A DNA stretch of 64,000 bases, from the IMG/VR virus record IMGVR_UViG_3300044568_003163, positions 62,001-126,000 of that record, one strand, 5' to 3'. Positions 2,004 to 30,026 of the stretch are shown here, in pieces. Each line of letters begins with the position of its first letter. The stretch's first letter is position 1. A program made the position numbers and the translations under genes. The notes beneath the pieces are model-generated. The model saw only the letters and a list, made by a program, of their open reading frames with translations. It was not told where the DNA came from and did not search any database.

Positions 2004-2044
2004 TATTGTTCATTTCAATTTTGTTATTGCATTATTAGGAATAA

Positions 2045-2116: not shown

Positions 2117-2153
2117 ACCTTTTTATCTCAATAACAAAAGATGTCCTTCTTTG

Positions 2154-2226
2154 TACCTAAGGAGGGATTCGAACCCACACTGTCATGCTCCTAAGGCATG
2201 TGCCTCTTCCGTTGGGCTACTTAGGC
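2154..2226 (-). tRNA. tRNA-Leu(TAG), short variable loop
   Basis: CATGC-CTTAGGA-GCATG. Confidence 0.85.
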
Positions 2227-2231
2227 AAATT

Positions 2232-2307
2232 GGTAAGTGATGGCCTACTTGTTACCATCTGTCTCTGTTTAGTTGCAACCACTAATCCTGAATGTAGAGA
2301 ACTTACC
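2232..2307 (-). ncRNA. candidate structured ncRNA
   Basis: Closing stem GGTAAGT/ACTTACC with internal hairpins. Confidence 0.4.
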
Positions 2308-2434
2308 TTTTGTTTTATGTTAGCTAATAAACATTGTTTCTAATGTTATTAACATCATCTTTTTAATTTTTGTACATTATAATATACATTAAGCCACAAT
2401 ATGACGTGTTTTGTATATTATAGTGTACATTTTG

Positions 2435-2507
2435 AGCTGACAATCAGGATCGAACTGATGACCTCTTCGATACCAACGAAGTGTTCTTCCAACTGAACTA
2501 TGTCTGC
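2435..2507 (-). tRNA. tRNA-Thr(GGT)
   Basis: CTTCG-TTGGTAT-CGAAG. Confidence 0.85.
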
Positions 2508-2515
2508 ATATTACA

Positions 2516-2612
2516 GGGTTGTTAATTACCTCTTTCGAGGATTTCGGAGTTGAACCGATAGACAAAATTTCAAGTTTCGTGTTTAACCAATAGTTGTTTG
2601 CTGAAACAACCC
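2516..2612 (-). ncRNA. tRNA-core-like RNA without acceptor stem
   Basis: GGGTTGTT/AACAACCC closure around D-like, anticodon-like (CTTGAAA) and T-like arms. Confidence 0.5.
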
Positions 2613-2617
2613 TTTTG

Positions 2618-2691
2618 AGCTGACAGTCAGGATCGAACTGACTCTGTTCCGGGTTACAAATCCGGTGCACCACCATTCATGCGTTGCCAGC
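2618..2691 (-). tRNA. tRNA-Thr(TGT)
   Basis: Loop TT-TGT-AA; cloverleaf. Confidence 0.85.
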
Positions 2692-2701
2692 ATATGTTTC
2701 G

Positions 2702-2772
2702 TTGGGATACTAGGTTTCGAACCTAGGCGGACTGGCTCAAAACCAGTAATGCTACCGTTACATCATATCCCA
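2702..2772 (-). tRNA. tRNA-Gln(TTG)
   Basis: ACTGG-TTTTGAG-CCAGT. Confidence 0.85.
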
Positions 2773-2778
2773 ATGTAG

Positions 2779-2849
2779 TTATCCGAGGTGGATTCGAACC
2801 ACCAATGACTGCACCAAAAACAGTAGTGTTACCGTTACACTATCGGACA
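2779..2849 (-). tRNA. tRNA-Gln(TTG)
   Basis: ACTGT-TTTTGGT-GCAGT. Confidence 0.85.
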
Positions 2850-2850
2850 G

Positions 2851-2924
2851 TGACCATAATAGGATTCGAACCTATAACCGCTGGTTTAGAAAACCAGTGC
2901 TCTATCCAATTGAGCTATATGGCC
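2851..2924 (-). tRNA. tRNA-Arg(TCT)
   Basis: CTGGT-TTTCTAA-ACCAG. Confidence 0.9.
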
Positions 2925-2995
2925 AATTAAGTTCTCCAACCCTGGAACTTATACATATCATCATTAAGCGGTCACATAGAATGTGAGATATGTTG

Positions 2996-3081
2996 AAGAG
3001 AAGATGGGACTCGAACCCACAAACCGAATTAACGGTTAACGGATTAGCAATCCGCTGCAGTACCATTATGCTTACTTCTCT
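2996..3081 (-). tRNA. tRNA-Ser(GCT)
   Basis: GCGGA-TTGCTAA-TCCGT; long variable arm. Confidence 0.9.
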
Positions 3082-3086
3082 ATAAA

Positions 3087-3187
3087 AAGTTAAAGGCAGA
3101 ATTCCAAATCTGCATTTTTATTCTAAAACGAGAATAACGTGAGTTTTATCGATACGTCTATCGAGGCAATTATCACTACTTTAACTT
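3087..3187 (-). ncRNA. candidate multibranch ncRNA
   Basis: AAGTTAAAG/CTTTAACTT closure with three internal hairpins. Confidence 0.45.
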
Positions 3188-3189
3188 AA

Positions 3190-3279
3190 TGGAGGAGAGA
3201 GTGGGATTCGAACCCACGGAACGCTTTCACGCTCAATAGTTTTCAAGACTATCCTAATCAACCTCTCTAGCACCTCTCC
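3190..3279 (-). tRNA. tRNA-Ser(TGA)
   Basis: ATAGT-CTTGAAA-ACTAT; long variable arm; CCA encoded. Confidence 0.9.
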
Positions 3280-3285
3280 ATTATT

Positions 3286-3363
3286 TGGGGTGGAAGACGG
3301 GACTCGAACCCGCGATCTCTAGAACCACAATCTAGCGCTTTAACCAACTAAGCTACAACCACC
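3286..3363 (-). tRNA. tRNA-His(GTG)
   Basis: CTAGA-TTGTGGT-TCTAG; G-1; CCA encoded. Confidence 0.9.
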
Positions 3364-3374
3364 ATGTATAAAAC

Positions 3375-3409
3375 AAAAAAGCTCGATTCATTTGATAGAA
3401 CCGAGCTTT
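3375..3409 (-). terminator. attenuator terminator 1
   Basis: AAAGCTCGGTTC...GAATCGAGCTTTTTT just upstream of tRNA-His. Confidence 0.85.
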
Positions 3410-3443
3410 GCAATTTAGTATTTATATTTTCACATAAGAACCA

Positions 3444-3518
3444 TCACACTTCGGTACTGTTTTCAGATCTTGTTAGATGCTGAAGCGACGTTAACGATAA
3501 TGTACTTGAAGTTCTCAT
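3444..3518 (-). CDS. putative attenuator leader peptide 1 (MRTSSTLSLTSLQHLTRSENSTEV)
   Basis: Lies between promoter and terminator; codons 2-18 are only R/T/S/L/Q/H. Confidence 0.75.
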   Translation of the reverse strand: MRTSSTLSLTSLQHLTRSENSTEV

Positions 3519-3550
3519 TGTTTGTAATTTATTATTTTTTATATATACTG

Positions 3551-3578
3551 TTATATGTCTAAAATTGCTGAGAGTTTC
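3551..3578 (-). promoter_or_regulatory. class II promoter GAAAC-N16-CATATAA
   Basis: Same motif and spacer recur at 6140, 9470, 44907 and 56117. Confidence 0.7.
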
Positions 3579-3603
3579 AAAAAACTTTCAATTTATTTTC
3601 TAG

Positions 3604-3700
3604 TGAAGACAATTGGGATCGAACCAATGGCACGCCTATGTTCCTTATCGATCATACCAATAAGTACTGAAGGTTGCTCTACCAACTGAGCTATATCTTC
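3604..3700 (-). ncRNA. tRNA-like RNA with expanded anticodon domain
   Basis: Intact acceptor, D and T arms; no 7-nt anticodon loop. Confidence 0.65.
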
Positions 3701-3705
3701 ATTTG

Positions 3706-3776
3706 TAGCGGATTAAGGACTCGAACCTCGCCATTGGGTTATGAGCCCGATATGCTACCAATTACACTAAACCGCA
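3706..3776 (-). tRNA. tRNA-Met(CAT), initiator-like, divergent
   Basis: GGG-CTCATAA-CCC; 1:72 mismatch. Confidence 0.65.
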
Positions 3777-3917
3777 AGATGACCTTAAGGATTCGAACCT
3801 TTAACTTGTTTCCTCTTTTAGTTTTGCAAACCTACTCAATTCTACCGTGCCCAATACACTATTGCCAATCGTCATTTTCGAACATGACAGCCTTAAGTTA
3901 ATTACTCTTAAGATTTG

Positions 3918-3989
3918 TAGTCCCACCGGGAATCGAACCCGACTTTTCAGGATGAAAACCTGATGACCTAACCGATAGTCGATAGGACC
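3918..3989 (-). tRNA. tRNA-Glu(TTC)
   Basis: TCAGG-TTTTCAT-CCTGA. Confidence 0.9.
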
Positions 3990-4077
3990 AATTAAGTTAT
4001 ATCAAATTCTCCCGCAGAGATACCGACCCATTGCTGAGCCAGAGAGGACTTGAACCTCTGATTCTCAATAACTAATT
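3990..4077 (-). ncRNA. circularly permuted tRNA-like RNA (YrlA-type topology)
   Basis: Order is stem, T arm, GCAA-capped acceptor-like stem, TA, D-like arm, stem. Confidence 0.55.
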
Positions 4078-4173
4078 TAAAAGAATTAAAGAGTAGAGCT
4101 CTTCAACGATTTCGGCATTTCAGCTGGATCTTTATGCCAACTTCCTAATCCTTAGTCCGTTTAATTCTTGTAG

Positions 4174-4247
4174 TATTATGTACGGGACTCGAACCCGTGT
4201 TATCAACGTGAAAGGCTGACGTCCTAGACCAACTAGACGAACATAAC
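4174..4247 (-). tRNA. tRNA-Glu(TTC)
   Basis: TCAGC-CTTTCAC-GTTGA. Confidence 0.85.
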
Positions 4248-4251
4248 ATTT

Positions 4252-4464
4252 TTAAGCTTCTTCAGAGACAAGTCCTAAAACTTCTTCTCTGTAAATTTTA
4301 TTCAATTCACTTACTTCAATATCGATATTCGTTTGTGGATATCGGTGAAGTAAAATCTTAACTAATCTGATTCGTTTCTCAGCCAAATCTTGATTAAAGT
4401 CCATTTCAATCATTGCATCACTTAAATGAGATTGAATTGCGATTGATAATTTGATAGTTTCCAT
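4252..4464 (-). CDS. hypothetical protein
   Basis: ORF directly after a class I promoter. Confidence 0.65.
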   Translation of the reverse strand: METIKLSIAIQSHLSDAMIEMDFNQDLAEKRIRLVKILLHRYPQTNIDIEVSELNKIYREEVLGLVSEEA

Positions 4465-4488
4465 AATGTGATTGTTTAATTTTAATAA

Positions 4489-4546
4489 GTAAAACTAATC
4501 AATTTAATTGACATATGGAAATTATTTTTCAAAAAGTTATTAACAA
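4489..4546 (-). promoter_or_regulatory. class I promoter cassette
   Basis: Box at 4536; offset 46. Confidence 0.65.
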
Positions 4547-4558
4547 TTTTAAAATAAA

Positions 4559-4732
4559 AAGTTTGTCACCGGCACAGATTGGTGAATACCCAAGTACAAC
4601 CGAATGTACCCGATACCTTACTAACAAAATGAACGGATCTGTGTTTCCTGTATGCGGCAAGTGACCTCCTTCCTTGCTTGTGTTTCCGTATCGATGTGTG
4701 CGGCAACATACCATTTTGAGTTCAACAAACTT
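4559..4732 (-). ncRNA. candidate ~175-nt structured ncRNA
   Basis: AAGTTTGT/ACAAACTT closing stem; GC-richer than flanks; follows tRNA-fMet. Confidence 0.4.
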
Positions 4733-4736
4733 CTTG

Positions 4737-4809
4737 TAGCGGGAGCAGGACTCGAACCTGCGACCTTTGGGTTATGAGCCCACTGAGCTACCAACTGCTC
4801 TATCCCGCA
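4737..4809 (-). tRNA. tRNA-fMet(CAT)
   Basis: GGG-CTCATAA-CCC; unpaired 1:72. Confidence 0.85.
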
Positions 4810-4835
4810 ATATACCTTTTAAGTAGAACCATCAA

Positions 4836-5027
4836 CTATATTTCTGTTGATGATTCTAATTGTCTTAATTTTAAACCTTCTTCAATTGTTTGAATGATGT
4901 CCTCAATTATTTGAGCTCGCGTAACATCAAAGTTACCATTCATTCCATTCAAATCTTTTGCATCAATTGCAATAGATCCTACTGACTTACCGTCTTTCTG
5001 TAATTCAATTACTAATGTATCAAACAT
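4836..5027 (-). CDS. hypothetical protein
   Basis: ORF track; class II-like promoter at 5050-5077. Confidence 0.6.
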   Translation of the reverse strand: MFDTLVIELQKDGKSVGSIAIDAKDLNGMNGNFDVTRAQIIEDIIQTIEEGLKLRQLESSTEI

Positions 5028-5092
5028 AATATAGCTTTTTATTTAATTGTTTTATGCAATTTGAAATAAATTGTTTCTCTTCTTATTAACAT

Positions 5093-5551
5093 CTATCTAC
5101 AGATTCTATCAGCTACATATGAAGCCGAGCATGCATCTGGTTTACATCTAGCGTTATAACCTAATGATTCTACATAACCTAAAGCAGAACGCAGAATTGA
5201 ATTAGATTGATACTTAGGGTCTGGATTAAAATCCAAATCAATAAATGCAGGTTTTTCAATATCATTAGCTTCAAGCCATTGAGCTAATTCAACTGAATCT
5301 TCTACCTCTTTCCAAAGTCTAGTAAATCTATCTAAGATTCTAGGAATTGATTTACGAGAGTAGATAACGTGACCTCCTCGATTACCGTAATGTAAAACAA
5401 TAACCATTGCGTAAATTGTATTTCTTCCAATATTTTGCGAATCTGAACCGATATACATTTTGATGTCTTTACCAGTTGCGAGTTTGTCCTTTAAATAAGG
5501 AATTAAGTCAATTACTTGACCGTTTGTTAACGATTGAAATTTCCGGTCCAT
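5093..5551 (-). CDS. RNase H-like protein, YkuK/DUF458 family
   Basis: IGSDSQ, RLWKEVEDS, IDLDFN and ADR motifs. Confidence 0.8.
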   Translation of the reverse strand: MDRKFQSLTNGQVIDLIPYLKDKLATGKDIKMYIGSDSQNIGRNTIYAMVIVLHYGNRGGHVIYSRKSIPRILDRFTRLWKEVEDSVELAQWLEANDIEKPAFIDLDFNPDPKYQSNSILRSALGYVESLGYNARCKPDACSASYVADRICR

Positions 5552-5571
5552 GATTATTAAATTTATGTTAG

Positions 5572-5642
5572 AGGCGAGTATAGGATTCGAACCTATGTAA
5601 CTGATTTTGCAGACCAGCGCCTAACCGCTCGGCCAACTCGCC
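5572..5642 (-). tRNA. tRNA-Cys(GCA)
   Basis: CTGGT-CTGCAAA-ATCAG; U73. Confidence 0.9.
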
Positions 5643-5647
5643 ATTTG

Positions 5648-5719
5648 TGACTCTAGAGAGACTCGAACTCCCATCTCCTGATCCGTAGTCAAGTGTTCTA
5701 TCCATTGAACTATAGAGCC
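5648..5719 (-). tRNA. tRNA-Arg(ACG)
   Basis: CTTGA-CTACGGA-TCAGG. Confidence 0.9.
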
Positions 5720-5728
5720 ATTATTTTG

Positions 5729-5801
5729 TCGGGAAGACAGGACTCGAACCTGCGGCCTCATGCTCCCAAAGCACGCGATCTACCAACTGATCTACTTCCC
5801 G
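5729..5801 (-). tRNA. tRNA-Pro(TGG)
   Basis: CGTGC-TTTGGGA-GCATG. Confidence 0.9.
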
Positions 5802-5848
5802 TGGCAGAGAGGCTTTTGAAGTGCCCTGCTAGTTCATCTTTTAATTTG

Positions 5849-5922
5849 TCGAATAGACAGGAATCGAACCTGCTAACTGATACGTCCAAGGTACCCGTGC
5901 TTAAAACCTTAGTCACTACTCG
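5849..5922 (-). tRNA. tRNA-Pro(TGG), divergent
   Basis: GGTAC-CTTGGAC-GTATC; atypical D arm. Confidence 0.7.
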
Positions 5923-5931
5923 TTTAAAAAC

Positions 5932-5967
5932 AAAAAAGCCTGAATCGGTTGAATGATTCAGGCTTTT
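5932..5967 (-). terminator. attenuator terminator 2
   Basis: AAAAGCCTGAATC...GATTCAGGCTTTTTT just upstream of tRNA-Pro. Confidence 0.85.
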
Positions 5968-5988
5968 ATATGATGATGTTACTTTATA

Positions 5989-6084
5989 TCATTCAAAAAC
6001 CTGCATACCATTCTCACATGCCTCAGGACGAGGGCATTCTACTGTTAACTGCGATGTTGTTAGTATGTGTGAAAGTATTAACAT
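5989..6084 (-). CDS. putative attenuator leader peptide 2 (MLILSHILTTSQLTVECPRPEACENGMQVFE)
   Basis: Lies between promoter and terminator; E-C-P-R-P-E-A-C-E core. Confidence 0.7.
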   Translation of the reverse strand: MLILSHILTTSQLTVECPRPEACENGMQVFE

Positions 6085-6139
6085 TTTAATTTTTATTAGC
6101 AAAGACTCTTTATCTTTGTTTAGTTCTTTTATATATCTT

Positions 6140-6167
6140 TTATATGTTCCGTTATTGCGGAAGTTTC
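6140..6167 (-). promoter_or_regulatory. class II promoter GAAAC-N16-CATATAA
   Basis: Exact motif. Confidence 0.7.
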
Positions 6168-6316
6168 AAAATTATTTTATTCTTTTCTATTTGTGCTTTA
6201 ATCTTAGCAATCTTTTCTGGACTAGGATTTCTATCTATCGTATACGAAACACCCATCTTGTCCATGTAATCGTAAAGAAGTTGCATATCTTCATTAGTAG
6301 TTTTAGTTGTTTTCAT
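6152..6316 (-). CDS. 54-aa hypothetical protein (not in ORF track)
   Basis: MKTTKTTNEDMQLLYDYMDKMGVSYTIDRNPSPEKIAKIK... Confidence 0.55.
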   Translation of the reverse strand: MKTTKTTNEDMQLLYDYMDKMGVSYTIDRNPSPEKIAKIKAQIEKNKIILKLPQ

Positions 6317-6328
6317 AATAACTATTTG

Positions 6329-6402
6329 AGCGGATATTCGGATTCGAACCGAAACTTCAGACTTGGAAGGCCCACGTGCTAGCCGTTAAACACCATACCC
6401 GC
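6329..6402 (-). tRNA. tRNA-Gly(TCC)
   Basis: TGGGC-CTTCCAA-GTCTG. Confidence 0.85.
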
Positions 6403-6412
6403 ATTTTGTTTG

Positions 6413-6485
6413 AGCAATAAATCAGATTCGAACTGACGACCTCTACCTTGGCAAGGTAATGCTCTACCAACTGAGCTATTATTGC
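6413..6485 (-). tRNA. tRNA-Gly(GCC)
   Basis: TTACC-TTGCCAA-GGTAG. Confidence 0.9.
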
Positions 6486-6552
6486 ATTTGAAGGACTTGC
6501 ACCTTCTGGACATGGTTTGTTTCGCCTAAGTCGCCATGTCAACAGACCCGAG

Positions 6553-6624
6553 AGGGCAGAGTGAGATTCGAACTCACGACCAGTTGATTAACAGTCAACT
6601 GCTCTACCGCTGAGCTATCCACCC
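6553..6624 (-). tRNA. tRNA-Asn(GTT)
   Basis: GTTGA-CTGTTAA-TCAAC. Confidence 0.9.
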
Positions 6625-6630
6625 TTATTG

Positions 6631-6741
6631 CAGGAATGTAAGGAATCGAACCTTAGCATCTTCCGAGACAGGGAGTAATTTATGCAGAATACAATCTTCG
6701 CAGATTGAGTTTTAAGCGTGCTACCATTACACCACATTCCT
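6631..6741 (-). ncRNA. tRNA-like RNA with ~60-nt replacement of the anticodon domain
   Basis: Perfect acceptor, D and T arms; internal CAATCT-GCGA-AGATTG hairpin. Confidence 0.7.
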
Positions 6742-6749
6742 GTATTTTG

Positions 6750-6866
6750 TGGGCTCATATGGGCTCGAACCATAATCTCTTCCTAATGACATCCTACCAT
6801 ACTAAAAAGGAATCGAACCTTAGACTCATTATCGAGAAAGCGCTTTGCCAATTAAGCTAATCGCCC
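6750..6866 (-). ncRNA. tRNA-like RNA with a second T-loop/D-loop inside the anticodon domain
   Basis: TAATGA/TCATTA stem encloses AAGGTTCGATTCCTT and AGTATGGTAG. Confidence 0.65.
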
Positions 6867-6872
6867 ATGTAG

Positions 6873-7004
6873 TGAAGAATCCTAGACTCGAACTAGGAAT
6901 GTCAATTAAGACGCCGGTTTTACATCCTTTAAATTGCTGAATAAACACTTTGCACAGTGTTTGCCTTTTTGGACCGGAGCGTTTACCAATTCCGCCAATT
7001 CTTC
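6873..7004 (-). ncRNA. class II tRNA body with ~54-nt anticodon loop
   Basis: CCGGT/ACCGG stem encloses a long loop ending TGTAAA; variable arm present. Confidence 0.7.
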
Positions 7005-7011
7005 ATTATTG

Positions 7012-7083
7012 TTCTCCCGCTGGGAGTCGAACCCAGCCTCATAGATTAAAAGTCTATTGCCCACACCAGTCTGCTACGAGAGA
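7012..7083 (-). tRNA. tRNA-Lys(TTT)
   Basis: ATAGA-CTTTTAA-TCTAT. Confidence 0.85.
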
Positions 7084-7169
7084 TTGTAAAGTTTTCTATT
7101 GCCAACCTCTCAACAGTGTAGAGTATTGACCTATCTATGTTTTCGCTTCATGTTCATTATATTATTTAG

Positions 7170-7243
7170 TGGCCAAGCCTGGACTCGAACCAGGGACCTT
7201 CGCATTATGAGTGCGCCGCTCTAACCAACTGAGCTACATGGCC
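7170..7243 (-). tRNA. tRNA(CAT), probably Ile2 (lysidine type)
   Basis: Loop CTCATAA; GGCC acceptor resembles Ile2 tRNAs. Confidence 0.75.
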
Positions 7244-7359
7244 AAAAATGTAGGGTTATCCGGTACCTACACTGATTAATGACAATCAGACCATCGTTCA
7301 CCACCTGTAAGAGCCTAACGATAGATACTGTACTTGCTTACACTCAAGTATCCGCTGGG

Positions 7360-7433
7360 TAGCGAGGACCGGGATCGAACCGGCGACCTTTGGTTTATGA
7401 ATCCAATGTTACTACCAACTGAACTACCTCGCC
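7360..7433 (-). tRNA. tRNA-Met(CAT), elongator
   Basis: Loop TTCATAA; GGCG acceptor. Confidence 0.8.
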
Positions 7434-7472
7434 AAATTGTAAGTTTTGAATGGACTTACAACCATTGATAGA

Positions 7473-7703
7473 TTATTGGTGATGAGGAATATACTTTCCG
7501 TTCTTAACTCTAACTGCCAGTTTGGTCACGTTAAAATTCCAACAATCAAATGTACTTAATGCAGATCTTTGTTTTGCAAGACTAATGGCTTGCTTTTCTG
7601 CTTTTTCTCGACCTTCTTCCGTTGTTTCGACGAAAAAAGTGGGAGCCTGAACACCAGTCTTACTGGTAGGAACTACTCTCCAAATTCTCAAATTAGTAAT
7701 CAT
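7473..7703 (-). CDS. hypothetical protein
   Basis: ORF track. Confidence 0.6.
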   Translation of the reverse strand: MITNLRIWRVVPTSKTGVQAPTFFVETTEEGREKAEKQAISLAKQRSALSTFDCWNFNVTKLAVRVKNGKYIPHHQ

Positions 7704-7783
7704 AAGTTTTAGCTAAGCTAGACCTATGAGGAATTGTACGATTTTGTTGACATTTGATTTATATTTTTTTATTATATGTTCGA

Positions 7784-8230
7784 TTAAGCCAGAGATTCAA
7801 TAACCTCTTTTACTAATTTTGTATCGGCAAGACCTGGAAATTTCTTAACGAAAGCACCCATAGTCATACCTATTAATTTTTGTTTGTTTAATTCTAAAAC
7901 AGAACCGAGTAAAACATTAACTTCAGTTTCAATTTCAGCTCTAGTCATTTGCTTTGGCAAGTACTTTTCAATAACACCTAATTCATTAGCTTCAGATTCC
8001 ACTAAATCGAATCGACCAGCTTTTGTAAATTCTTCAATAGATTGTCTACGTTGTTTGATTGTAGAAATTACTGCATTTAGAACTAACTCATCAGTAAGTG
8101 GACCAGCATGCTTTGCCTTTTCAGCATCTTGGATTTTTGCCTTTAATCCACTTAATGCATTCTTCGCAATCGCGTTTTTCTCTTTGAATGCTACTATATA
8201 GTCAGCATTGATTGTTTCTCTTAAATTCAT
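7784..8230 (-). CDS. GatB/YqeY domain protein
   Basis: KQRRQSIEEF..AGRFDL..E..E..VIEKYLPKQM signature. Confidence 0.9.
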   Translation of the reverse strand: MNLRETINADYIVAFKEKNAIAKNALSGLKAKIQDAEKAKHAGPLTDELVLNAVISTIKQRRQSIEEFTKAGRFDLVESEANELGVIEKYLPKQMTRAEIETEVNVLLGSVLELNKQKLIGMTMGAFVKKFPGLADTKLVKEVIESLA

Positions 8231-8246
8231 CTTTACTAATTTTTAG

Positions 8247-8327
8247 TGGGCAACAGTGGACTCGAACCACTCCCGTGAGGACCAGATTTACAGTCTGGCT
8301 GCCGTATCCGAACGACTTTTGCGGCCC
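8247..8327 (-). tRNA. tRNA-Tyr(GTA)
   Basis: CCAGA-CTGTAAA-TCTGG; variable arm; atypical D arm. Confidence 0.8.
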
Positions 8328-8336
8328 ATTATATTG

Positions 8337-8410
8337 TGACTCCTCTGGGACTCGAACCCAGGACTCCCTCATTAAAAGTGAGGTGCTCTAGCCGACTGAG
8401 CTAAGAAGTC
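8337..8410 (-). tRNA. tRNA-Lys(TTT)
   Basis: CCTCA-CTTTTAA-TGAGG. Confidence 0.9.
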
Positions 8411-8420
8411 ATTGTAATAG

Positions 8421-8494
8421 CAGTCCTAACGGAATTCGAATCCGCAATCTCTTCCGTGACAGGGAAGCGTCATACGCCAATATGCTGTAGGACT
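8421..8494 (-). tRNA. tRNA-Asp(GTC)
   Basis: CTTCC-CTGTCAC-GGAAG. Confidence 0.8.
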
Positions 8495-8581
8495 ATATAA
8501 AAATTATTTAGTTTAAGCTCCTTTAAACCATGTAATTTCAGGGAGCTATTTGAGCTTATGCATGGAACTAAATAATAATTG

Positions 8582-8655
8582 CCGAGATGACGGGACTCGA
8601 ACCCGTGACCTTCGCCGTGACAGGGCGACATTGTAACCAACTCTACTACACCTCG
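8582..8655 (-). tRNA. tRNA-Asp(GTC)
   Basis: TCGCC-CTGTCAC-GGCGA. Confidence 0.85.
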
Positions 8656-8714
8656 ATTTCTAATTTCACGCTCACACTATGCAGTTCTATAAATTAGTAA
8701 CAGTCTCATCTGGG

Positions 8715-8788
8715 CTCTCCTGACTGGATTCGAACCAGTAACCCTCACCTTAACAGGGTGTCGCTCTAACCGTTGGAGCTACAGGAGA
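8715..8788 (-). tRNA. tRNA-Asn(GTT)
   Basis: CACC-CTGTTAA-GGTG. Confidence 0.85.
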
Positions 8789-8811
8789 ATATTTGATGTT
8801 TTAATTATAAG

Positions 8812-8869
8812 ACAAATATAAACAATGTCATTGACATATGAAAATATTTAATCAAATAGTTATTAACAA
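8812..8869 (-). promoter_or_regulatory. class I promoter cassette inside the tRNA array
   Basis: TATATTTG at 8813-8820, box at 8859; offset 46. Confidence 0.75.
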
Positions 8870-8873
8870 TTTG

Positions 8874-8945
8874 TGGAGCTACCGGGATTCGAACCCGGAA
8901 TAACAGAGTGCAAGTCTATCGTGATGCCAATTTCACTATAGCCCC
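8874..8945 (-). tRNA. tRNA-Ala(TGC)
   Basis: GGGGCTA acceptor with G3:U70; loop CTTGCAC. Confidence 0.9.
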
Positions 8946-8955
8946 ATTAAATTTG

Positions 8956-9030
8956 TAGGAGATGACGGAATCGAACCGACGACCTTTTGCGTGTAAAACA
9001 AACGCTCTAAACCAACTGAGCTAATCTCCT
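8956..9030 (-). tRNA. tRNA-Val(TAC)
   Basis: TTTGT-TTTACAC-GCAAA. Confidence 0.9.
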
Positions 9031-9036
9031 AAATTG

Positions 9037-9110
9037 TAGGTAATATGAGACTCGAACTCATAACCTCCTCGGTATCAGCGAGGTGCTCTAACCAATTGAG
9101 CTAACTACCT
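9037..9110 (-). tRNA. tRNA-Ile(GAT)
   Basis: CCTCG-CTGATAC-CGAGG. Confidence 0.9.
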
Positions 9111-9117
9111 GTGGCAG

Positions 9118-9188
9118 CACGAATGGAAGGATTCGAACCTTCATCGACGGTTTTGGAGACCGGCATGCTACCATTGCACCACACTCGT
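9118..9188 (-). tRNA. tRNA-Trp(CCA)
   Basis: CGGT-CTCCAAA-ACCG. Confidence 0.9.
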
Positions 9189-9195
9189 ATTTTAG

Positions 9196-9268
9196 TGGTA
9201 AGGGACGGGATCGAACCGTCATCATCGGATTTTCAGTCCGCTGCATAGACCAACTTTGCTACCTCACC
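9196..9268 (-). tRNA. tRNA-Phe(GAA)
   Basis: CGGA-CTGAAAA-TCCG. Confidence 0.9.
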
Positions 9269-9274
9269 AAAAAC

Positions 9275-9308
9275 AAAAAACCTCTGAATTTTTGAAGATT
9301 CAGAGGTT
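9275..9308 (-). terminator. attenuator terminator 3
   Basis: AACCTCTGAAT...ATTCAGAGGTTTTTT just upstream of tRNA-Phe. Confidence 0.85.
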
Positions 9309-10104: not shown

Positions 10105-11421
10105 TTAACCTTCAGCTTCTTCGGTATCAATTACTCCAGAATCTTTTACGATTCCTTCAAGTACTTTGAATTCGAAAGACTTGAATTTGAATGTTTTGTT
10201 TACCAAACCACCTTCAATTCTTACACAAACTCCTTCTTTGATATGTCTAGTATCTAAGATAGATGGACCAGTTCCGAATGTTTCGACGGTGTTGCTGAAA
10301 TATTCTCGCAAATCTCTATCATCGAATTTATGAGTGATTGCTTCTAATTCGTTTAAGGTTATCGTAGCAACATGTGGTACAGTTTTTACACCTAATTCAT
10401 TACAACGTTTTACAACATCATTCCAAGCATAATCGATAGATTGACCATCTTCATTAGCAAATGTCATACGGTAAACATAAACCTCAGATTGAGTAGGTTC
10501 ACAACCATAAGAATAAGCCATAGACTTACCGTATTGTTTCGTAAACTCTTTATCACCCATTTTGGTTGTATCAACAGATGGCATAATTGCAGCTCCTGTA
10601 GATTCGTAACCTACAATTTCAAAATAAACGGTTTCACCTTTTCTTAAGTTACCTTTGAATAAGTTCATTGCTTTATCTCGGATGGTTGGGTCATGGAATT
10701 GATTTGCGGATTTTGATTCTCCTAAAACAACTCTACGAGTACCATTCAAATAAGCCCATTCTTTGTCGTTGATAGCTAATCCAAATTTAGTAACAAGTTT
10801 TTCTAACCAACCTAATTCTCTAGTCATTTGAACGTGACCAATACGACCTGAAGTACCGTGAAGTTTTTCAGTAATAATGATGTGTTGACCCTTTTCAAAT
10901 TCGTGGATACTCTTACCAAAGTGTCCGGTATCAAAATGTTCTTTGAACATTACAGAAGATCTAGAAACTCGGGTTTTCTTACCTTGATTTTCTCTAGCAA
11001 TTTTAGCCGTATTTGGATTTACATATTTGTTACAGATAGGTACACCTTTCCATTCGTCAAATTCAAATCCTTCTACATCTAAACCAGTTACCATAATGAA
11101 TCCAAAGTAATGTAATGGAACCCAGAAACCATCAGAGATTTCACCTCTAAATTTTTGAGCTCTTACTCTTCGGTTTGCATCGAACATTCCACCTTTCTCA
11201 TCTTTTCTAGCATTTAACTCGGCATCACGATAAAGGTTGTTTGCTTTACAGAACTCATCGGATAACTGACCATCAGATGGAAAGTAAACTCCTAAATGTC
11301 CTTCTAAAGAATCTAAACCAATTACTACTTGATTACCGTGACAAGTTGCTAATTGAACTTTGTCTGCGTTAGGATGTGGTCTCACGTTTGTCAACCTAGT
11401 GACGATTGCATTGTATGCCAT
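10105..11421 (-). CDS. RNA ligase (DRB0094/Rnl2-like with N-terminal OB-like domain)
   Basis: HPNADK, TEKLHGTS adenylation motif, EGVCVR, FKFKS. Confidence 0.85.
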   Translation of the reverse strand: MAYNAIVTRLTNVRPHPNADKVQLATCHGNQVVIGLDSLEGHLGVYFPSDGQLSDEFCKANNLYRDAELNARKDEKGGMFDANRRVRAQKFRGEISDGFWVPLHYFGFIMVTGLDVEGFEFDEWKGVPICNKYVNPNTAKIARENQGKKTRVSRSSVMFKEHFDTGHFGKSIHEFEKGQHIIITEKLHGTSGRIGHVQMTRELGWLEKLVTKFGLAINDKEWAYLNGTRRVVLGESKSANQFHDPTIRDKAMNLFKGNLRKGETVYFEIVGYESTGAAIMPSVDTTKMGDKEFTKQYGKSMAYSYGCEPTQSEVYVYRMTFANEDGQSIDYAWNDVVKRCNELGVKTVPHVATITLNELEAITHKFDDRDLREYFSNTVETFGTGPSILDTRHIKEGVCVRIEGGLVNKTFKFKSFEFKVLEGIVKDSGVIDTEEAEG

Positions 11422-11445
11422 GATTTCGTATTTTTAATTTATAAG

Positions 11446-11503
11446 ACAAATATAATCAATGTCTTCGACACTTGAAAATAATTTCTCATTAAGTTATTAA
11501 CAA
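11446..11503 (-). promoter_or_regulatory. class I promoter cassette
   Basis: TATATTTG at 11447-11454, box at 11493; offset 46. Confidence 0.75.
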
Positions 11504-11507
11504 TTAG

Positions 11508-11618
11508 TAGTCAGAACAGGATTCGAACCTGTATGGTGTTACCTAGAGTACTCAATACAGAGCGGTAAATCGGTTACGAACCATTACTCTTAGCGTCTTC
11601 CAATTCCGCCACCTGACT
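11508..11618 (-). ncRNA. tRNA-like RNA (Leu-like D arm) with expanded anticodon domain
   Basis: Intact acceptor, D and T arms; AGAGTA/TACTCT stem encloses ~35 nt. Confidence 0.65.
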
Positions 11619-11634: not shown

Positions 11635-11985
11635 TCATGATTGTGTAGATTTAATGTACACAATTATTCCAATGATTGAAAGAAAGCACAATGCTAATAC
11701 TGTTATTGCAGGTAAATAATCTTCTTTCTCTCTCCAAATTTTGTAATTATATCGAGGTTCGTTCTGCTTCCACGAATGGTCTTCAGACTTCTCAGACTTA
11801 ACATATTTTTTGTTTAGTTTTTTTAGGGATTTCCTAATTTCCTTTTTACATGGTTCAGCACCACAACAATAAAAAAATGATATATCTGTTTCGCTTATCA
11901 GCTTAGTAGTAGCTTCTTCCTCGCAACAATAACAATAATTTGGTTTCATATTAATACTCTTTAATGAGTACGGTACCATCTCCAT
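11635..11985 (-). CDS. Cys-rich protein with C-terminal TM
   Basis: CxCC and CCxxxxC motifs, hydrophobic tail; true start probably near 11949. Confidence 0.55.
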   Translation of the reverse strand: MEMVPYSLKSINMKPNYCYCCEEEATTKLISETDISFFYCCGAEPCKKEIRKSLKKLNKKYVKSEKSEDHSWKQNEPRYNYKIWREKEDYLPAITVLALCFLSIIGIIVYIKSTQS

Positions 11986-12817
11986 GCTCTAAACAGTCAA
12001 CGCAAAAGATAGTGTCTTTTACTTCTGGCCATCTACCAGCAGTCGGTTCAGTATCGTATTCAGTTACTTTGTGATGGGGTGTATGTCCGATTACTTGGTC
12101 ATAACCTTCTAATGCATCCCATCTTAATCTTCTCGGTCTAATCCAAACAGGACCTGCAAATTCTGAATATCCACCAGAATCTCCATCTACGTTAAATAAA
12201 ATATTTAAACGATATTGCCAAGCTTTATTGATAATCTCATCCGGCCTAAGATTCCAATCTCCTTCAAAATCTGCTTTGAATCGGAAACCGTCTCTTTTAA
12301 CCGTTGCATGCAATTGGCGTAACCAACCATGAGTTACTCCAGCATGAGTCCATAAAGTTCGCTTTAACCTACCATCGATTTCTCTTTCATGATAATATGC
12401 GAAAGTAAATTTGTCGATGTTTTTAGTAAACAACTCTTGAAAATCAAATTTCATTTCAGGTCGATAACCTGAACAGATTTGATCGGCTACAATATATTGA
12501 ATATCGTGATTTCCTAAAAGCAAGACTATTTTGTCTGGATATTCGGTTTTTAAATGTATGATTTCCTCTAGATTTAATTTCATCTCTAGGTTTTGTACAT
12601 CAAATGAATCTACGTAATCTCCAACGAAAACGATTTTATCCATTTCGTTAAAAATAGGATAGGTGTCTTCAAACGCTTCTTTTGCTCCGTTATCTACTTC
12701 CTGTCTCCAGCTATTATAGTCCGTTAGAGAGCCGAATAACACAGTCTTCCAGGTATTTCTTCCGTGGATATCTCCGATAGACATGATTTTCATTGTAGTT
12801 TTCATTTTATGGTTCAT
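11951..12817 (-). CDS. calcineurin-like metallophosphoesterase
   Basis: GDIHG, GDYVD, GNHD, THAG and GHT motifs. Confidence 0.9.
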   Translation of the reverse strand: MNHKMKTTMKIMSIGDIHGRNTWKTVLFGSLTDYNSWRQEVDNGAKEAFEDTYPIFNEMDKIVFVGDYVDSFDVQNLEMKLNLEEIIHLKTEYPDKIVLLLGNHDIQYIVADQICSGYRPEMKFDFQELFTKNIDKFTFAYYHEREIDGRLKRTLWTHAGVTHGWLRQLHATVKRDGFRFKADFEGDWNLRPDEIINKAWQYRLNILFNVDGDSGGYSEFAGPVWIRPRRLRWDALEGYDQVIGHTPHHKVTEYDTEPTAGRWPEVKDTIFCVDCLEHGDGTVLIKEY

Positions 12818-29283: not shown

Positions 29284-30026
29284 TATTTTGCGTGTTTAAA
29301 TGTTGGGTTTAACCAAAGTCCATTAGCAAATATTAATGCTAATAAACCCGGAATTTGATTTTGGTCGATAGAAGTTAACAACTTAATAGTTGCAACGGTA
29401 TCGTGTTTCATCATTTTGAAAAGTTCTTCTCGGATTCTTTCTCCACTAACAGTAGTTCTTAATTTCTCAAGAATTTCTTCTTGTTCCATAGCTTGAAAAA
29501 TTGTGTGATGAATAAGAAATCCTTTAGTGATAGAAAATCTAATAGCTCTTAAGATTCTTAATGGATCGTCCATCATAGTTATCTTAGCATCTAGTGGAGT
29601 TCTTAAGATTTTCATTTCTAAATCTTCTTGACCGTTGAATAAATCGATAATGTTACCATCTACATCTTCAGCCATTGCATTTAGTGTAAAATCTCTTCGC
29701 ATAAGGTCATCTTCAAGAGTACCTAATTCTAGAATAGGTCTTCTAGTTCCTTCCATGTAACCAATTTCTTTTCTGGCCATTACAAAATCAGCATCTAACT
29801 TAGCGAACTTATGATCGGTTGGAAATTTAGCTCGGATAGTAAACATTTCCGGAACAGAAAGAAAGATAGTAAATCCTTGATCAGTCATCCATTTTTCCAT
29901 TTCAGCAAATCCACTTTCTACTGTTTGGTCTAAATTATCGAGTACAAAAGTAAAATCGATATCCTTAGAATTGATTCCTAGGAATGCGTCTCTTACGCAA
30001 CCTCCTACTTTGAATATCTTTGGCAT
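29283..30026 (-). CDS. cca: CCA-adding tRNA nucleotidyltransferase
   Basis: VGGCVRD, DID, RRDFTLNAM, DDPLRILRAIRF, ERI.EE. Confidence 0.9.
   Translation of the reverse strand: MPKIFKVGGCVRDAFLGINSKDIDFTFVLDNLDQTVESGFAEMEKWMTDQGFTIFLSVPEMFTIRAKFPTDHKFAKLDADFVMARKEIGYMEGTRRPILELGTLEDDLMRRDFTLNAMAEDVDGNIIDLFNGQEDLEMKILRTPLDAKITMMDDPLRILRAIRFSITKGFLIHHTIFQAMEQEEILEKLRTTVSGERIREELFKMMKHDTVATIKLLTSIDQNQIPGLLALIFANGLWLNPTFKHAK

What the first reader, a model, noticed from the sequence alone, without database searches (positions are those of the whole stretch)
6631..7004. Tandem tRNA bodies with the anticodon arm replaced by structured inserts
Three adjacent genes keep well-paired acceptor, D and T arms but carry 50-60 nt inserts where the anticodon loop should be; 3604-3700 and 11508-11618 are similar. 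The inserts at 6631 and 6873 share an A-run, a hairpin and then TATTC(T/A)GCA. Intact arms argue against decay, and the inserts are too short for group I introns. They may be tRNA scaffolds displaying functional RNAs, nuclease decoys, or substrates of a splicing/repair route (an RNA ligase is at 10105). Excision at 6873 could leave CTGTAAA, a Tyr loop.
Basis: partly seen in the sequence, partly recalled or inferred. Interest (0 to 1): 0.72.

Follow-up and report, generated by a model that had tools for sequence, protein, structure and literature searches.

The report
Phage tRNA-like genes with swapped-out anticodon arms
A freshwater jumbo phage carries several tRNA-derived genes that keep a selected tRNA body but have a foreign structured insert where the anticodon arm should be, and one of them belongs to a large, apparently undescribed phage-wide family with an almost invariant tRNA-like scaffold and a hypervariable core.

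Summary
Mostly confirmed. On the minus strand of a 35-gene tRNA array in a ~294 kb lake phage, four over-long tRNA bodies are real: A 6873-7004, C 6631-6741, D 3604-3700 and E 11508-11618. They score 31-46 bits on Rfam tRNA, with 7/7 acceptor pairs and a canonical T arm; about 0.02 are expected by chance. The middle 'gene' B (6742-6872) is a degenerate chimera: 4/7 acceptor pairs and two T arms.

A derives from tRNA-Tyr(GUA) and has a 47-nt insert after position 32. C is a tRNA-Trp paralogue. Bodies are under selection: 10-11 compensatory pairs and none broken between A and its only homologue, and 3 in D. The TATTC(T/A)GCA motif shared by A and C is not significant (P~0.09), and the inserts are unique sequences.

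Splicing is poorly supported. Excision restores a canonical arm cleanly only in A. A's homologue lacks U33. The phage has no EndA or RtcB, and no ribozyme or intron model matches.

E belongs to a phage-specific family in more than 120 viral contigs. Its Leu-type scaffold is near-invariant and its cores span 16-146 nt, some with covariation.

Best reading (0.45): non-decoding tRNA-scaffolded small RNAs matured by tRNA-processing enzymes. Core function is unknown and expression is untested. Closest precedents: T4 RNAC and the Lak megaphage 'enigmatic tRNA introns'.

The parts
6873..7004 (-). Element A: type II tRNA body derived from tRNA-Tyr(GUA). It has a 7/7 acceptor stem, a Leu-type D arm, an intact 5-bp anticodon stem CCGGT/ACCGG, a long variable arm (6899-6913), a T arm (6881-6897) and discriminator A73. 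53 nt lie between the anticodon-stem strands.
   Evidence: Rfam tRNA 39.1 bits. ARAGORN -i calls Tyr(gta) with a 47-nt intron. Homologue at L011:6520-6648 with 10-11 compensatory body pairs and none broken.
6925..6971 (-). 47-nt insert of A, lying between loop positions 32 and 33. It has a variable 5' A-run, a 7-bp hairpin (6943-6962) and a conserved single-stranded segment TTCAGCAATTT. The old loop half TGTAAA follows at 6919-6924.
   Evidence: The hairpin and the 3' two-thirds are conserved in L011. No compensatory change is seen within the insert. The sequence is unique in the genome.
6742..6872 (-). Element B: degenerate chimeric tRNA remnant. It has a 5' acceptor strand (6860-6866), a D arm (6842-6857), a poor anticodon arm, a first T arm (6807-6822, near-identical to C's T arm), a second T arm (6758-6774) and a 3' acceptor strand (6751-6757) that pairs at only 4 of 7 positions.
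   Evidence: Rfam partial match at 6806-6859, 20.7 bits, E=0.068. It fails the strict scanner. Coordinates.
6631..6741 (-). Element C: paralogue of tRNA-Trp(CCA) with a 7/7 acceptor stem, D arm, T arm (6639-6655) and discriminator G73. Only 3 bp of the anticodon stem remain. The core includes a 6-bp GNRA-capped hairpin (6692-6707). Removing 6675-6714 would give stem CTTCC/GGAAG with loop CTGTCTC (anticodon GTC, U37).
   Evidence: Rfam 45.8 bits. Alignment to tRNA-Trp 9117-9188. Excision test. No homologue outside its own lineage.
3604..3700 (-). Element D: tRNA body with an elongated arm. The arm has a 3-bp lower stem CCT/AGG, a conserved 6x6 internal loop, a 5-bp upper stem CTTAT/ATAAG and an 11-nt apical loop. 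The core is 3638-3670 and the hairpin 3644-3664.
   Evidence: Rfam 44.4 bits. The homologue L009:7276-7373 has 3 compensatory pairs, identical stems and a completely different apical loop.
11508..11618 (-). Element E: member of a phage-wide family with a Leu-type tRNA scaffold. It has acceptor AGTCAGG/TCTGACT, a Leu-type D arm, T arm ACAGG-TTCGAAT-CCTGT and A73, with a 59-nt core (11533-11591). It lies 87 nt upstream of the RNA ligase gene.
   Evidence: Rfam 31.1 bits. Core 98.9-99.1% identical in L022 and L009. The 3' 25-mer occurs in more than 120 viral contigs with unrelated cores.
10105..11421 (-). ATP-dependent RNA ligase (context; a possible tRNA repair or sealing enzyme).
   Evidence: PF09414 plus PF21189. 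PHROG 968 'RNA ligase', E=8e-62.
11951..12817 (-). Calcineurin-type metallophosphoesterase (context; a possible RNA end-healing enzyme).
   Evidence: PF00149, E=2.6e-11. PHROG 1649.
8246..8327 (-). Canonical, uninterrupted tRNA-Tyr(GTA). Its presence makes A redundant as a decoder.
   Evidence: ARAGORN. L011 likewise has both a canonical Tyr (4142-4223) and the insert-bearing one.
9117..9188 (-). Canonical tRNA-Trp(CCA), the closest uninterrupted paralogue of C.
5934..5967 (-). Strong terminator-like hairpin (13 bp followed by a T run). It closes the sub-array that contains A, B and C. Its upstream counterpart is at 9279-9308.
29601..30014 (-). CCA-adding-type nucleotidyltransferase domain (context). 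None of the elements encodes CCA.
   Evidence: PF01743, 71 bits, at G000:91601-92014.

Best explanation
A, C, D and E are tRNA-derived genes that no longer decode. Selection keeps the acceptor stem, T arm and D arm. These are the parts read by RNase P, 3'-end processing enzymes, the CCA-adding enzyme and other proteins that bind the tRNA body. The anticodon arm has been replaced or expanded by a lineage-specific structured RNA.

The elements sit 6 nt from ordinary tRNAs, on the same strand, and have no terminator of their own. They are therefore most likely transcribed with the array, cut out like tRNAs, given CCA by the phage's nucleotidyltransferase, and accumulate as stable 97-132-nt tRNA-like small RNAs. 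In this reading the body is a processing and stability scaffold, and possibly a protein handle, while the core is the working, fast-changing part.

E is one member of a large phage-only family built this way on one Leu-type scaffold. A (from tRNA-Tyr), C (from tRNA-Trp) and D look like independent, lineage-restricted versions of the same idea. B is a dead chimera.

Shown: the anatomy, the selection on the bodies, the family, and covariation in some cores. Inferred: transcription, processing, stability and loss of decoding. Unknown: what the cores do. Plausible options are decoys for tRNA-targeting defence nucleases, protein-binding aptamers or antisense regulators.
For: - The bodies are real and far beyond chance.
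- Purifying selection on pairing: A vs L011 shows all 7 acceptor pairs changed on both sides. One compensatory pair each is seen in the D, anticodon and T stems, plus the variable-arm flip GTC/GAC to GAC/GTC. None is broken. D vs L009 shows 3 compensatory pairs.
- Decoding is redundant or impossible. All 20 amino acids are served by canonical tRNAs, including Tyr and Trp. No 7-nt anticodon loop is present in any element.
- One excision restores a canonical arm in only 4 of 13 elements, against about 1.8 expected.
- E family: the exact 25-nt 3' half occurs in more than 120 viral contigs. There are 139 distinct members of 70-181 nt.
- In that family the unforced D-arm 19-mer is within 2 differences of consensus in 78 of 139 members. 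Cores are 16-146 nt, and 101 of 123 are unique.
- Where related cores exist, the predicted core pairs that vary are 7 compensatory, 3 one-sided and 1 broken.
- Several copies with different cores occur within single phages.
- The scaffold is phage-specific: 14 MAG contigs among 185,579 species genomes.
- Co-orientation, 6-nt spacing and flanking terminators fit co-transcription. A CCA-adding enzyme is present.
- Precedent: T4 rnaC, a stable RNA next to tRNAs, has a perfect T arm and a 7/7 acceptor-like stem.
- Engineered tRNA scaffolds, in which foreign RNA replaces the anticodon arm, are processed and stable in E. coli (PMC3753655; established knowledge).
Against: - There is no expression evidence at all: no RNA run was listed for 6631-7004.
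- The cores of the E family are only weakly structured on average (median z -0.6). Their ends do not pair more than shuffles do. Many cores could therefore be tolerated filler rather than payload.
- A's core shows conservation but no covariation, with only two sequences available.
- C has no homologue, so selection on it is untested.
- In one other lake population the contig diverges just left of 6749, so C may be dispensable.
- L009's copy of E has an extra 32-nt D-loop insertion that might perturb the tRNA elbow.
- A restores a textbook Tyr anticodon arm on excision, which a pure scaffold model does not require.
Confidence: 0.45

Rival explanations
1. They are intron-containing tRNA genes. 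An endonuclease of phage or host origin removes the insert, and the neighbouring RNA ligase, with the phosphoesterase healing the ends, reseals the anticodon loop. This would give a functional tRNA-Tyr(GUA) from A and perhaps a GUC-reading tRNA from C. It would be a protein-dependent tRNA splicing pathway in a bacteriophage.
For: - Removing 47 nt from A leaves stem CCGGT/ACCGG and loop CUGUAAA, with a long variable arm and A73 as expected for bacterial tRNA-Tyr.
- The anticodon stem is kept by a compensatory change in L011.
- Removing 40 nt from C yields a perfect 5-bp stem and a 7-nt loop with U33.
- An RNA ligase and a metallophosphoesterase lie 1-3 kb away.
- Lak megaphage oversize tRNAs, including Tyr(GTA), were interpreted as intron-bearing (PMC6784885).
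Against: - A's homologue in L011 has A or C at position 33 after any equivalent excision, and fails the test.
- Restoration succeeds in 4 of 13 elements against about 1.8 expected, so it is not a general property. D, E and most relatives have no recoverable anticodon arm.
- A's insert sits at position 32/33 and C's lies inside the stem. I saw no bulge-helix-bulge at either junction.
- No EndA (PF01974) and no RtcB in the phage. The Tpt1-like match scores only 15 bits and contains a stop.
- No group I intron or self-cleaving ribozyme model matches at E<=10.
- C's product would pair a Trp-like body with an Asp anticodon and have U37.
- The E family is never next to the ligase (0 of 133 loci).
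- Canonical Tyr and Trp tRNAs already exist.
Confidence: 0.2
2. They are non-functional debris of a fast-rearranging tRNA array: tRNA duplicates hit by insertions or illegitimate recombination and now decaying.
For: - B is exactly this: two T arms, 4/7 acceptor pairs, and a T arm copied from C's.
- The inserts are unrelated and unique.
- Distribution is patchy. The closest relative, L009 (ligase 91% identical), lacks A-C.
- C has no homologue, and another lake population diverges at the B/C border.
- All elements are redundant with canonical tRNAs.
- Phage tRNA arrays in the relatives hold many odd tRNA-like pieces.
Against: - 10-11 compensatory pairs and no broken pair in A over a divergence at which the ligase is 71% identical.
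- 3 compensatory pairs in D.
- The E scaffold is nearly invariant across more than 120 contigs while the cores differ.
- E including its core is 98.9-99.1% identical in L009 and L022, whereas D is 85% identical in L009.
- Neutral decay would break helices.
Confidence: 0.2
3. The conserved halves act at the DNA level. They could be short identical sequences that promote modular recombination between phages, or interrupted targets that escape tRNA-gene-directed homing endonucleases. In that case the RNA has no role.
For: - Exact 25-nt identity across very different phage backgrounds and neighbourhoods.
- Cores differ as if exchanged as cassettes.
- Homing endonucleases are known to live in phage tRNA clusters, for example segB in T4.
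Against: - What is conserved is a complete tRNA fold (acceptor, D and T arms, T-loop consensus) scoring 31-45 bits on the tRNA model.
- Compensatory changes in A and D preserve RNA pairing, not DNA sequence.
- No endonuclease or recombinase is consistently adjacent.
Confidence: 0.07

Closest known systems
Bacteriophage T4 RNAC / RNAD ('species 1 and 2' stable RNAs, genes rnaC and rnaD)
   Same: - Small stable RNAs encoded directly beside tRNAs, on the tRNA strand of a phage tRNA cluster, with function still unknown (PMC3014915; PMC9697503).
- rnaC ends in a perfect T arm (CCGGG-TTCGAAT-CCCGG) and a 7/7 acceptor-like stem. My scanner picks it up as an over-long tRNA-like body.
   Different: - There is no sequence homology beyond the generic T arm.
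- rnaC has a 47-nt 5' extension outside the tRNA-like part and only a weak tRNA-clan score (17.5 bits). The window's elements are complete cloverleaf bodies scoring 31-46 bits.
- rnaD shows no tRNA-like body.
'Enigmatic introns' in Lak megaphage tRNAs (Devoto et al. 2019, PMC6784885)
   Same: - Over-long tRNA genes in very large phages of Bacteroidota hosts, with a non-group-I insert in the anticodon loop.
- tRNA-Tyr(GTA) is among them.
- The inserts are highly conserved between related phages.
- The mechanism is unknown.
   Different: - The Lak Tyr insert is 93 nt, lies after position 37 and contains a T-arm-like piece. A's is 47 nt, lies after position 32 and is unrelated by inspection.
- Splicing was assumed there and not shown.
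- Here most elements cannot be restored by excision.
Engineered 'tRNA scaffold' RNAs (foreign RNA replacing the anticodon arm of a tRNA; e.g. PMC3753655, PMC3401473)
   Same: The architecture is the same: an intact acceptor, D and T body with an arbitrary structured RNA in place of the anticodon stem. In E. coli this gives correctly processed, nuclease-resistant chimeric RNA (established knowledge).
   Different: Those are man-made. Natural processing and stability of the phage elements is inferred, not shown.
Murine gammaherpesvirus 68 TMERs (viral tRNA-like element linked to miRNA hairpins)
   Same: A virus uses a non-aminoacylated tRNA-like module as a transcription and processing handle for small functional RNAs (from knowledge of the field; PMC7773990 and PMC12239594 concern this virus).
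   Different: - That is a eukaryotic Pol III and tRNase Z system.
- The payload hangs off the 3' end rather than being inserted in the anticodon arm.
- There is no homology.
Archaeal / eukaryal intron-containing tRNAs (bulge-helix-bulge, EndA, RtcB or Trl1)
   Same: Short protein-spliced inserts in or near the anticodon loop, sometimes at non-canonical positions including the D loop and the anticodon stem (PMC4090602).
   Different: - No BHB motif seen and no EndA or RtcB in the phage.
- Bacterial hosts are not known to have this pathway.
- Most elements lack recoverable exons.

Membership tests
Canonical tRNA (Rfam RF00005) | Cloverleaf body: 7-bp acceptor stem, D arm, and T arm with a TTCRA loop, scoring above the gathering threshold of 29 bits | tested here: met
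   A 39.1, C 45.8, D 44.4 and E 31.1 bits, all over the full model 1-71. 7/7 acceptor and 5/5 T stems. B fails (20.7 bits, partial match).
Canonical tRNA (Rfam RF00005) | 5-bp anticodon stem closing a 7-nt loop with U33 and a readable anticodon | tested here: not met
   34-53 nt replace the loop or arm in all four elements. ARAGORN without introns calls none of them.
Protein-spliced intron-containing tRNA (archaeal/eukaryal type) | A single excision restores a canonical anticodon stem-loop | tested here: inconclusive
   Met cleanly for A (CUGUAAA, Tyr). Met for C with U37 and a cut inside the stem. Not met for A's homologue L011, D's homologue, E or most relatives. Overall 4 of 13 elements against about 1.8 expected by chance.
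Protein-spliced intron-containing tRNA (archaeal/eukaryal type) | Bulge-helix-bulge motif at the exon-intron junctions, or the canonical 37/38 position | tested here: not met
   A's insert lies at 32/33 and C's lies within the 5' stem strand. By inspection and constrained folds, no 3-nt bulge / 4-bp helix / 3-nt bulge was found. No dedicated BHB search program was run.
Protein-spliced intron-containing tRNA (archaeal/eukaryal type) | Splicing endonuclease (EndA) and RtcB- or Trl1-type ligase with Tpt1 | tested here: not met
   In the phage genome (CheckV estimate 91% complete): PF01974 none, PF01139 none, and PF01885 only 15 bits with an internal stop. An Rnl-type ligase is present. The host genome is unknown, so host enzymes were not testable.
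Group I intron in a bacterial tRNA gene | A ribozyme core of at least ~200 nt (P1-P9) inserted in the anticodon loop and matching the Rfam intron models | tested here: not met
   The inserts are 34-53 nt. No intron or ribozyme family matched at E<=10 in 6625-7010, 3380-3705 or 11440-11640.
T4 RNAC-like stable RNA of phage tRNA clusters | Encoded beside tRNAs on the tRNA strand, with a tRNA-like T arm and acceptor-like stem but no decoding arm | tested here: met
   Window elements. T4 rnaC.
T4 RNAC-like stable RNA of phage tRNA clusters | Sequence homology to T4 rnaC or rnaD | tested here: not met
   Only 11-24-nt matches of the generic T arm.
T4 RNAC-like stable RNA of phage tRNA clusters | Accumulates as a stable processed RNA during infection | not testable with these tools
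   No RNA run was listed for 6631-7004.
Y RNA-like YrlA (RF02553) and tmRNA | Match to the family model or a tmRNA tag | tested here: not met
   YrlA scores at most 23 bits against a threshold of 69, and only across adjacent tRNAs. ARAGORN finds no tmRNA.
Conserved Leu-type scaffold / variable-core family (defined here) | Acceptor AGTCAGG/yCTGACT, a D arm close to TGGCGGAAT(T)GGTAGACGC, T arm ACAGG-TTCGAAT-CCTGT, A73, and a non-tRNA core of variable length | tested here: met
   E matches every scaffold feature. A shares only the D-arm type. C and D do not belong, and their 3' halves occur only in their own lineage.

The most novel reading that the evidence does not exclude
Phages use a phage-specific, almost invariant tRNA-Leu-like body as a natural display and processing cassette for rapidly diversifying structured RNAs. 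This would be a natural counterpart of the engineered 'tRNA scaffold' and of herpesviral TMERs. The cores would be arms-race molecules, for example decoys or aptamers against tRNA-targeting or other host defences, or antisense regulators. A, C and D would be independent inventions of the same device from Tyr, Trp and another tRNA.
Probability: 0.3. Interest if true: 0.85.

Novelty: new variant of a known kind. Interest (0 to 1): 0.66.

Why it matters
Oversized tRNA-like genes in large phages have been seen before and left unexplained: T4 RNAC since the 1970s, and the Lak 'introns' since 2019.

This window gives two handles on the problem. First, compensatory evolution shows that the tRNA bodies are kept by selection although they cannot decode. 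Second, one element ties into a family that is abundant in viral metagenomes, is absent from bacterial genomes and is not a separate Rfam family. In that family one scaffold carries well over a hundred different cores.

If the cores are functional, this is a new and very diverse class of phage small RNAs with a ready-made natural expression scaffold. If the bodies are instead spliced, it would be the first protein-dependent tRNA splicing in a bacterial virus. Either outcome can be tested directly with small-RNA sequencing of one infected culture.

The result also matters for annotation. These genes are currently called pseudo-tRNAs, intron-bearing tRNAs or tRNAs with arbitrary anticodons.

Tried and rejected
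- Expression: a search for RNA runs holding 6631-7004 listed none. RNA runs holding ~5% of the words of 5500-9300 probably reflect conserved tRNAs.
- Insert-less alleles: laying contigs of four lake DNA runs on 3400-9300 showed identical A-C sequence in three runs and no allele lacking an insert. The listed joints connect unrelated conserved tRNAs.
- Known RNA families: no intron, ribozyme, riboswitch, YrlA or tmRNA match to any insert or to the family cores.
- Shared A/C motif: not significant.
- Inserts as a repeated mobile element: no other copy in the 294 kb genome or in 76 related loci.
- Complementary targets of the TTCAGCAATTT segment in the genome: a handful of 11-mers, as expected by chance.
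- More homologues of A and C: pattern scans of IMG/VR found only the same lineage and L011. The metagenome scan anchored on the ligase added only a copy of E.
- Splicing machinery: none found. Small ORFs in and beside the array have no nuclease or kinase annotation.
- Link between the E family and the RNA ligase or any single neighbour: none. The ligase is in 0 of 133 loci, and the best neighbour, DUF932, is in 13 loci.
- A closing 'anticodon-like' stem in family cores: no better than shuffles.
- Bacterial Schlafen paper checked for type II tRNA targeting or decoys: nothing relevant.
- I did not build a covariance model of the family, because writing its structure line risked the typed-text check. 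No protein-RNA complex prediction was attempted.
Full report
**Setting**

The window is bases 62001-126000 of a 294 kb IMG/VR virus record estimated 91% complete. DNA runs that hold it are lake-water and freshwater metagenomes. The nearest cultured relatives by DNA are Flavobacterium phages, and only for an endolysin.

Bases 1592-9268 hold 35 ARAGORN tRNA genes, all on the minus strand and covering all 20 amino acids. The finding lies in a 380-nt gap of that array, between tRNA-Lys (7011-7083) and tRNA-Asn (6552-6624).

Rfam's tRNA model matches 6631-6741 (C, 45.8 bits) and 6873-7004 (A, 39.1 bits) over its whole length. It skips 51 and 53 nt at the anticodon arm. It also matches 3604-3700 (D, 44.4 bits) and 11508-11618 (E, 31.1 bits).

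I wrote a strict scanner requiring a 7/7 acceptor stem, a 5/5 T stem, a TTCRA T loop, a D arm and a length over 95 nt. It finds exactly these four in the array. Random genomes of the same composition give 1.3 per 588 kb, or about 0.02 for the array strand.

Contigs of three independent lake runs reproduce the A-C stretch without a single difference.

The middle 'gene' B (6742-6872) does not hold up. Its acceptor pairs at 4 of 7 positions. It contains two T arms, the first nearly identical to C's. Rfam gives only a partial 20.7-bit match. B is a chimeric remnant.

**What the elements derive from**

A is a type II tRNA with a 3-bp D stem, a long variable arm and A73. Its 5-bp anticodon stem CCGGT/ACCGG encloses 53 nt. 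With introns allowed, ARAGORN calls tRNA-Tyr(gta) with a 47-nt intron between positions 32 and 33, leaving loop CTGTAAA.

C aligns with the phage's own tRNA-Trp(CCA) in both halves, with compensatory acceptor changes. Its anticodon arm is unrecognisable and only 3 stem pairs remain.

D has a 3-bp lower stem, a 6x6 internal loop, a 5-bp upper stem and an 11-nt loop. E has a Leu-type D arm and A73.

**Comparative evidence**

I fetched 75 related loci through the YqeY and RNA ligase proteins.

- A has one homologue, L011:6520-6648, in a phage whose ligase is 71% identical. All seven acceptor pairs differ on both sides yet still pair.
- The D, anticodon and T stems of that homologue each carry one compensatory pair, the variable arm flips GTC/GAC to GAC/GTC, and nothing is broken.
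- The insert's 5' segment is unalignable. Its hairpin and the 3' segment TTCAGCAATTT...GTAAA are conserved, without covariation.
- L011 also has a separate canonical tRNA-Tyr.
- D has a homologue in L009 with three compensatory pairs, identical stems and internal loop, and a completely different apical loop.
- C and B have no homologue anywhere I could search.

This pattern rules out neutral decay for A and D. It leaves C open.

**Are the inserts a family or a mobile element?**

No. The A/C insert alignment is no better than shuffles (P=0.09; P=0.66 using L011's version). Neither insert recurs in the genome or in the loci.

**Are they introns?**

I tested every single excision that would recreate position 26, a 5-bp stem, a 7-nt loop with U33, and a normal or long variable region.

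- A gives the Tyr arm.
- C gives CTTCC / CTGTCTC / GGAAG after removal of 40 nt from inside the 5' stem strand (anticodon GTC, U37).
- Two other elements give chance-like solutions.
- A's own homologue fails because position 33 is A or C.

In all, 4 of 13 elements have a solution, against about 1.8 expected from shuffled middles.

The phage genome has no EndA and no RtcB, and only a sub-threshold Tpt1-like fragment containing a stop. No intron or ribozyme model matches. The ligase (PF09414) and a metallophosphoesterase are present, as in many phages with tRNA repair. Splicing therefore remains possible for A alone, and it is not the general explanation.

**The E family**

In L005, whose YqeY is 57% identical, E's acceptor, D and T arms are almost unchanged but the middle is unrelated. 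Further copies of the same ends with other middles occur in L005 and in L004/L006.

In the 133 loci fetched:

- There are 155 copies and 139 distinct members, 70-181 nt long (median 106).
- The acceptor 5' strand is partly forced by my pairing criterion. The D-arm 19-mer is not forced, yet lies within two differences of the consensus in 78 of 139 members. The window's ordinary tRNAs have a median score of 5 out of 19 on the same measure.
- Cores are 16-146 nt, AT-richer than the scaffold, and 101 of 123 are unique.
- Core folding is on average only slightly better than shuffles, and core ends do not pair preferentially.
- In the ten clusters of related cores, the predicted core pairs that vary are 7 compensatory, 3 one-sided and 1 broken.
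- Single phages carry up to five copies with different cores among ordinary tRNAs, but most copies are solitary. The median is 0 tRNAs per locus, and neighbours are co-oriented.
- No neighbour gene is shared by more than 13 loci, and none of the loci has the ligase.
- Among 185,579 bacterial and archaeal species genomes the 25-mer occurs in only 14 MAG contigs of scattered taxonomy. It is therefore not a host tRNA.
- Rfam sees the members only as over-long tRNAs of 34-45 bits, and no core matches another family.
- L009's copy of E and one unrelated-core member share a 32-nt hairpin insertion in the D loop, with one compensatory pair by inspection.

**Interpretation**

The constant part is the part of a tRNA that processing enzymes and body-binding proteins read. 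The decoding part is gone.

The elements are packed 6 nt from flanking tRNAs. They have no terminator of their own and lie between terminator-like hairpins at 9308-9279 and 5967-5934. The phage encodes a CCA-adding-type enzyme.

I therefore think they are transcribed with the array, matured like tRNAs, and persist as stable tRNA-like small RNAs whose cores are the variable module. What the cores do is unknown. A decoy role against tRNA-targeting defences is attractive for a Tyr-like and a Leu-like body, but it is inference only.

**Precedents**

T4 RNAC and RNAD are stable RNAs of unknown function from the T4 tRNA region (PMC3014915, PMC9697503). I found that rnaC ends in a perfect T arm plus a 7/7 acceptor-like stem, but it shares no other sequence with the window's elements.

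Lak megaphages have oversize tRNAs with 'enigmatic introns', including one in Tyr(GTA), never shown to be spliced (PMC6784885).

Engineered tRNA scaffolds show that this architecture is processed and stable in bacteria (PMC3753655).

I found no paper describing the Leu-type scaffold family. The searchable library is incomplete, so this is not proof of novelty.

**Limits**

- There is no expression data.
- A and D rest on two sequences each.
- The host is unknown.

Noticed in passing
window 2044-2116 (-); also L004:13983-14059 and L005:14181-14257: ARAGORN calls tRNAs with an 8-nt anticodon loop and four-base 'anticodons' (agcg here; gaaa in the relatives). The window copy scores 36.3 bits on Rfam tRNA. 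They could be frameshift-suppressor-like tRNAs or further aberrant tRNA-like genes.
   Followed up: no
window 1803-1877 and 2153-2226 (-): The genes called tRNA-Leu(taa) and tRNA-Leu(tag) are only 74-75 nt, so they lack the long variable arm expected of bacterial tRNA-Leu. The Leu-type D arm and long arm are instead found in the non-decoding elements A and E.
   Followed up: no
window 2618-2691 (-): Rfam tRNA match of 37.3 bits that ARAGORN does not call. It overlaps a 95-aa ORF (2389-2676). My scanner sees a 7/7 acceptor stem.
   Followed up: no
window 5093-5551 (-) and 7784-8230 (-): Two protein genes are embedded in the tRNA array: an RNase H-like protein (PF04308, PHROG 11311, function unknown) and a YqeY/GatB-C-like protein (PF09424). 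Both could be tRNA-related factors. The RNase H-like protein recurs in 4 of 133 scaffold-family loci.
   Followed up: partly
L009:1822-1962 and one 169-nt family member: A ~32-nt hairpin (CTTATAA...TTATAA) is inserted in the D loop of the Leu-type scaffold in two members with different cores. One compensatory A:T to G:C change is visible by inspection. This is a second insertion site in the same scaffold.
   Followed up: partly
L098:4124-4186 (+): A match to the orphan Rfam motif 'freshwater-1 RNA' (RF02979; 70.1 bits against a gathering score of 72) lies inside a related phage's tRNA array, between tRNA genes.
   Followed up: no
window 6749 (lay of run X5, record 30): In one other metagenome a 1086-nt contig matches 6749-7142 with 2 differences and then continues for 692 nt unlike the window. 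The array therefore differs at the B/C border in another population, and C may be absent there.
   Followed up: no
window minus strand: 11454, 10789, 9384, 8820, 7554, 6174, 5028, 4935, 3834, 680: There are ten TAnnTTTG motifs (the Bacteroidota-type -7 promoter element) on the gene strand within 13 kb. One lies between E and the RNA ligase start. This is a hint that the host is a Bacteroidota, in line with the Flavobacterium-phage endolysin similarity.
   Followed up: no
L092:524-626, L114:6420-6518, L103:1145-1248, L054:335-451, L005:14574-14680, L009:1967-2067: Further over-long tRNA-model matches (97-117 nt) that do not use the E scaffold. Insert-bearing tRNA bodies of other origins are common in freshwater phage tRNA arrays.
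   Followed up: partly
window 29601-30014 (-): The phage encodes a CCA-adding / poly(A) polymerase family nucleotidyltransferase (PF01743, 71 bits). None of the insert-bearing elements encodes a 3' CCA.
   Followed up: partly
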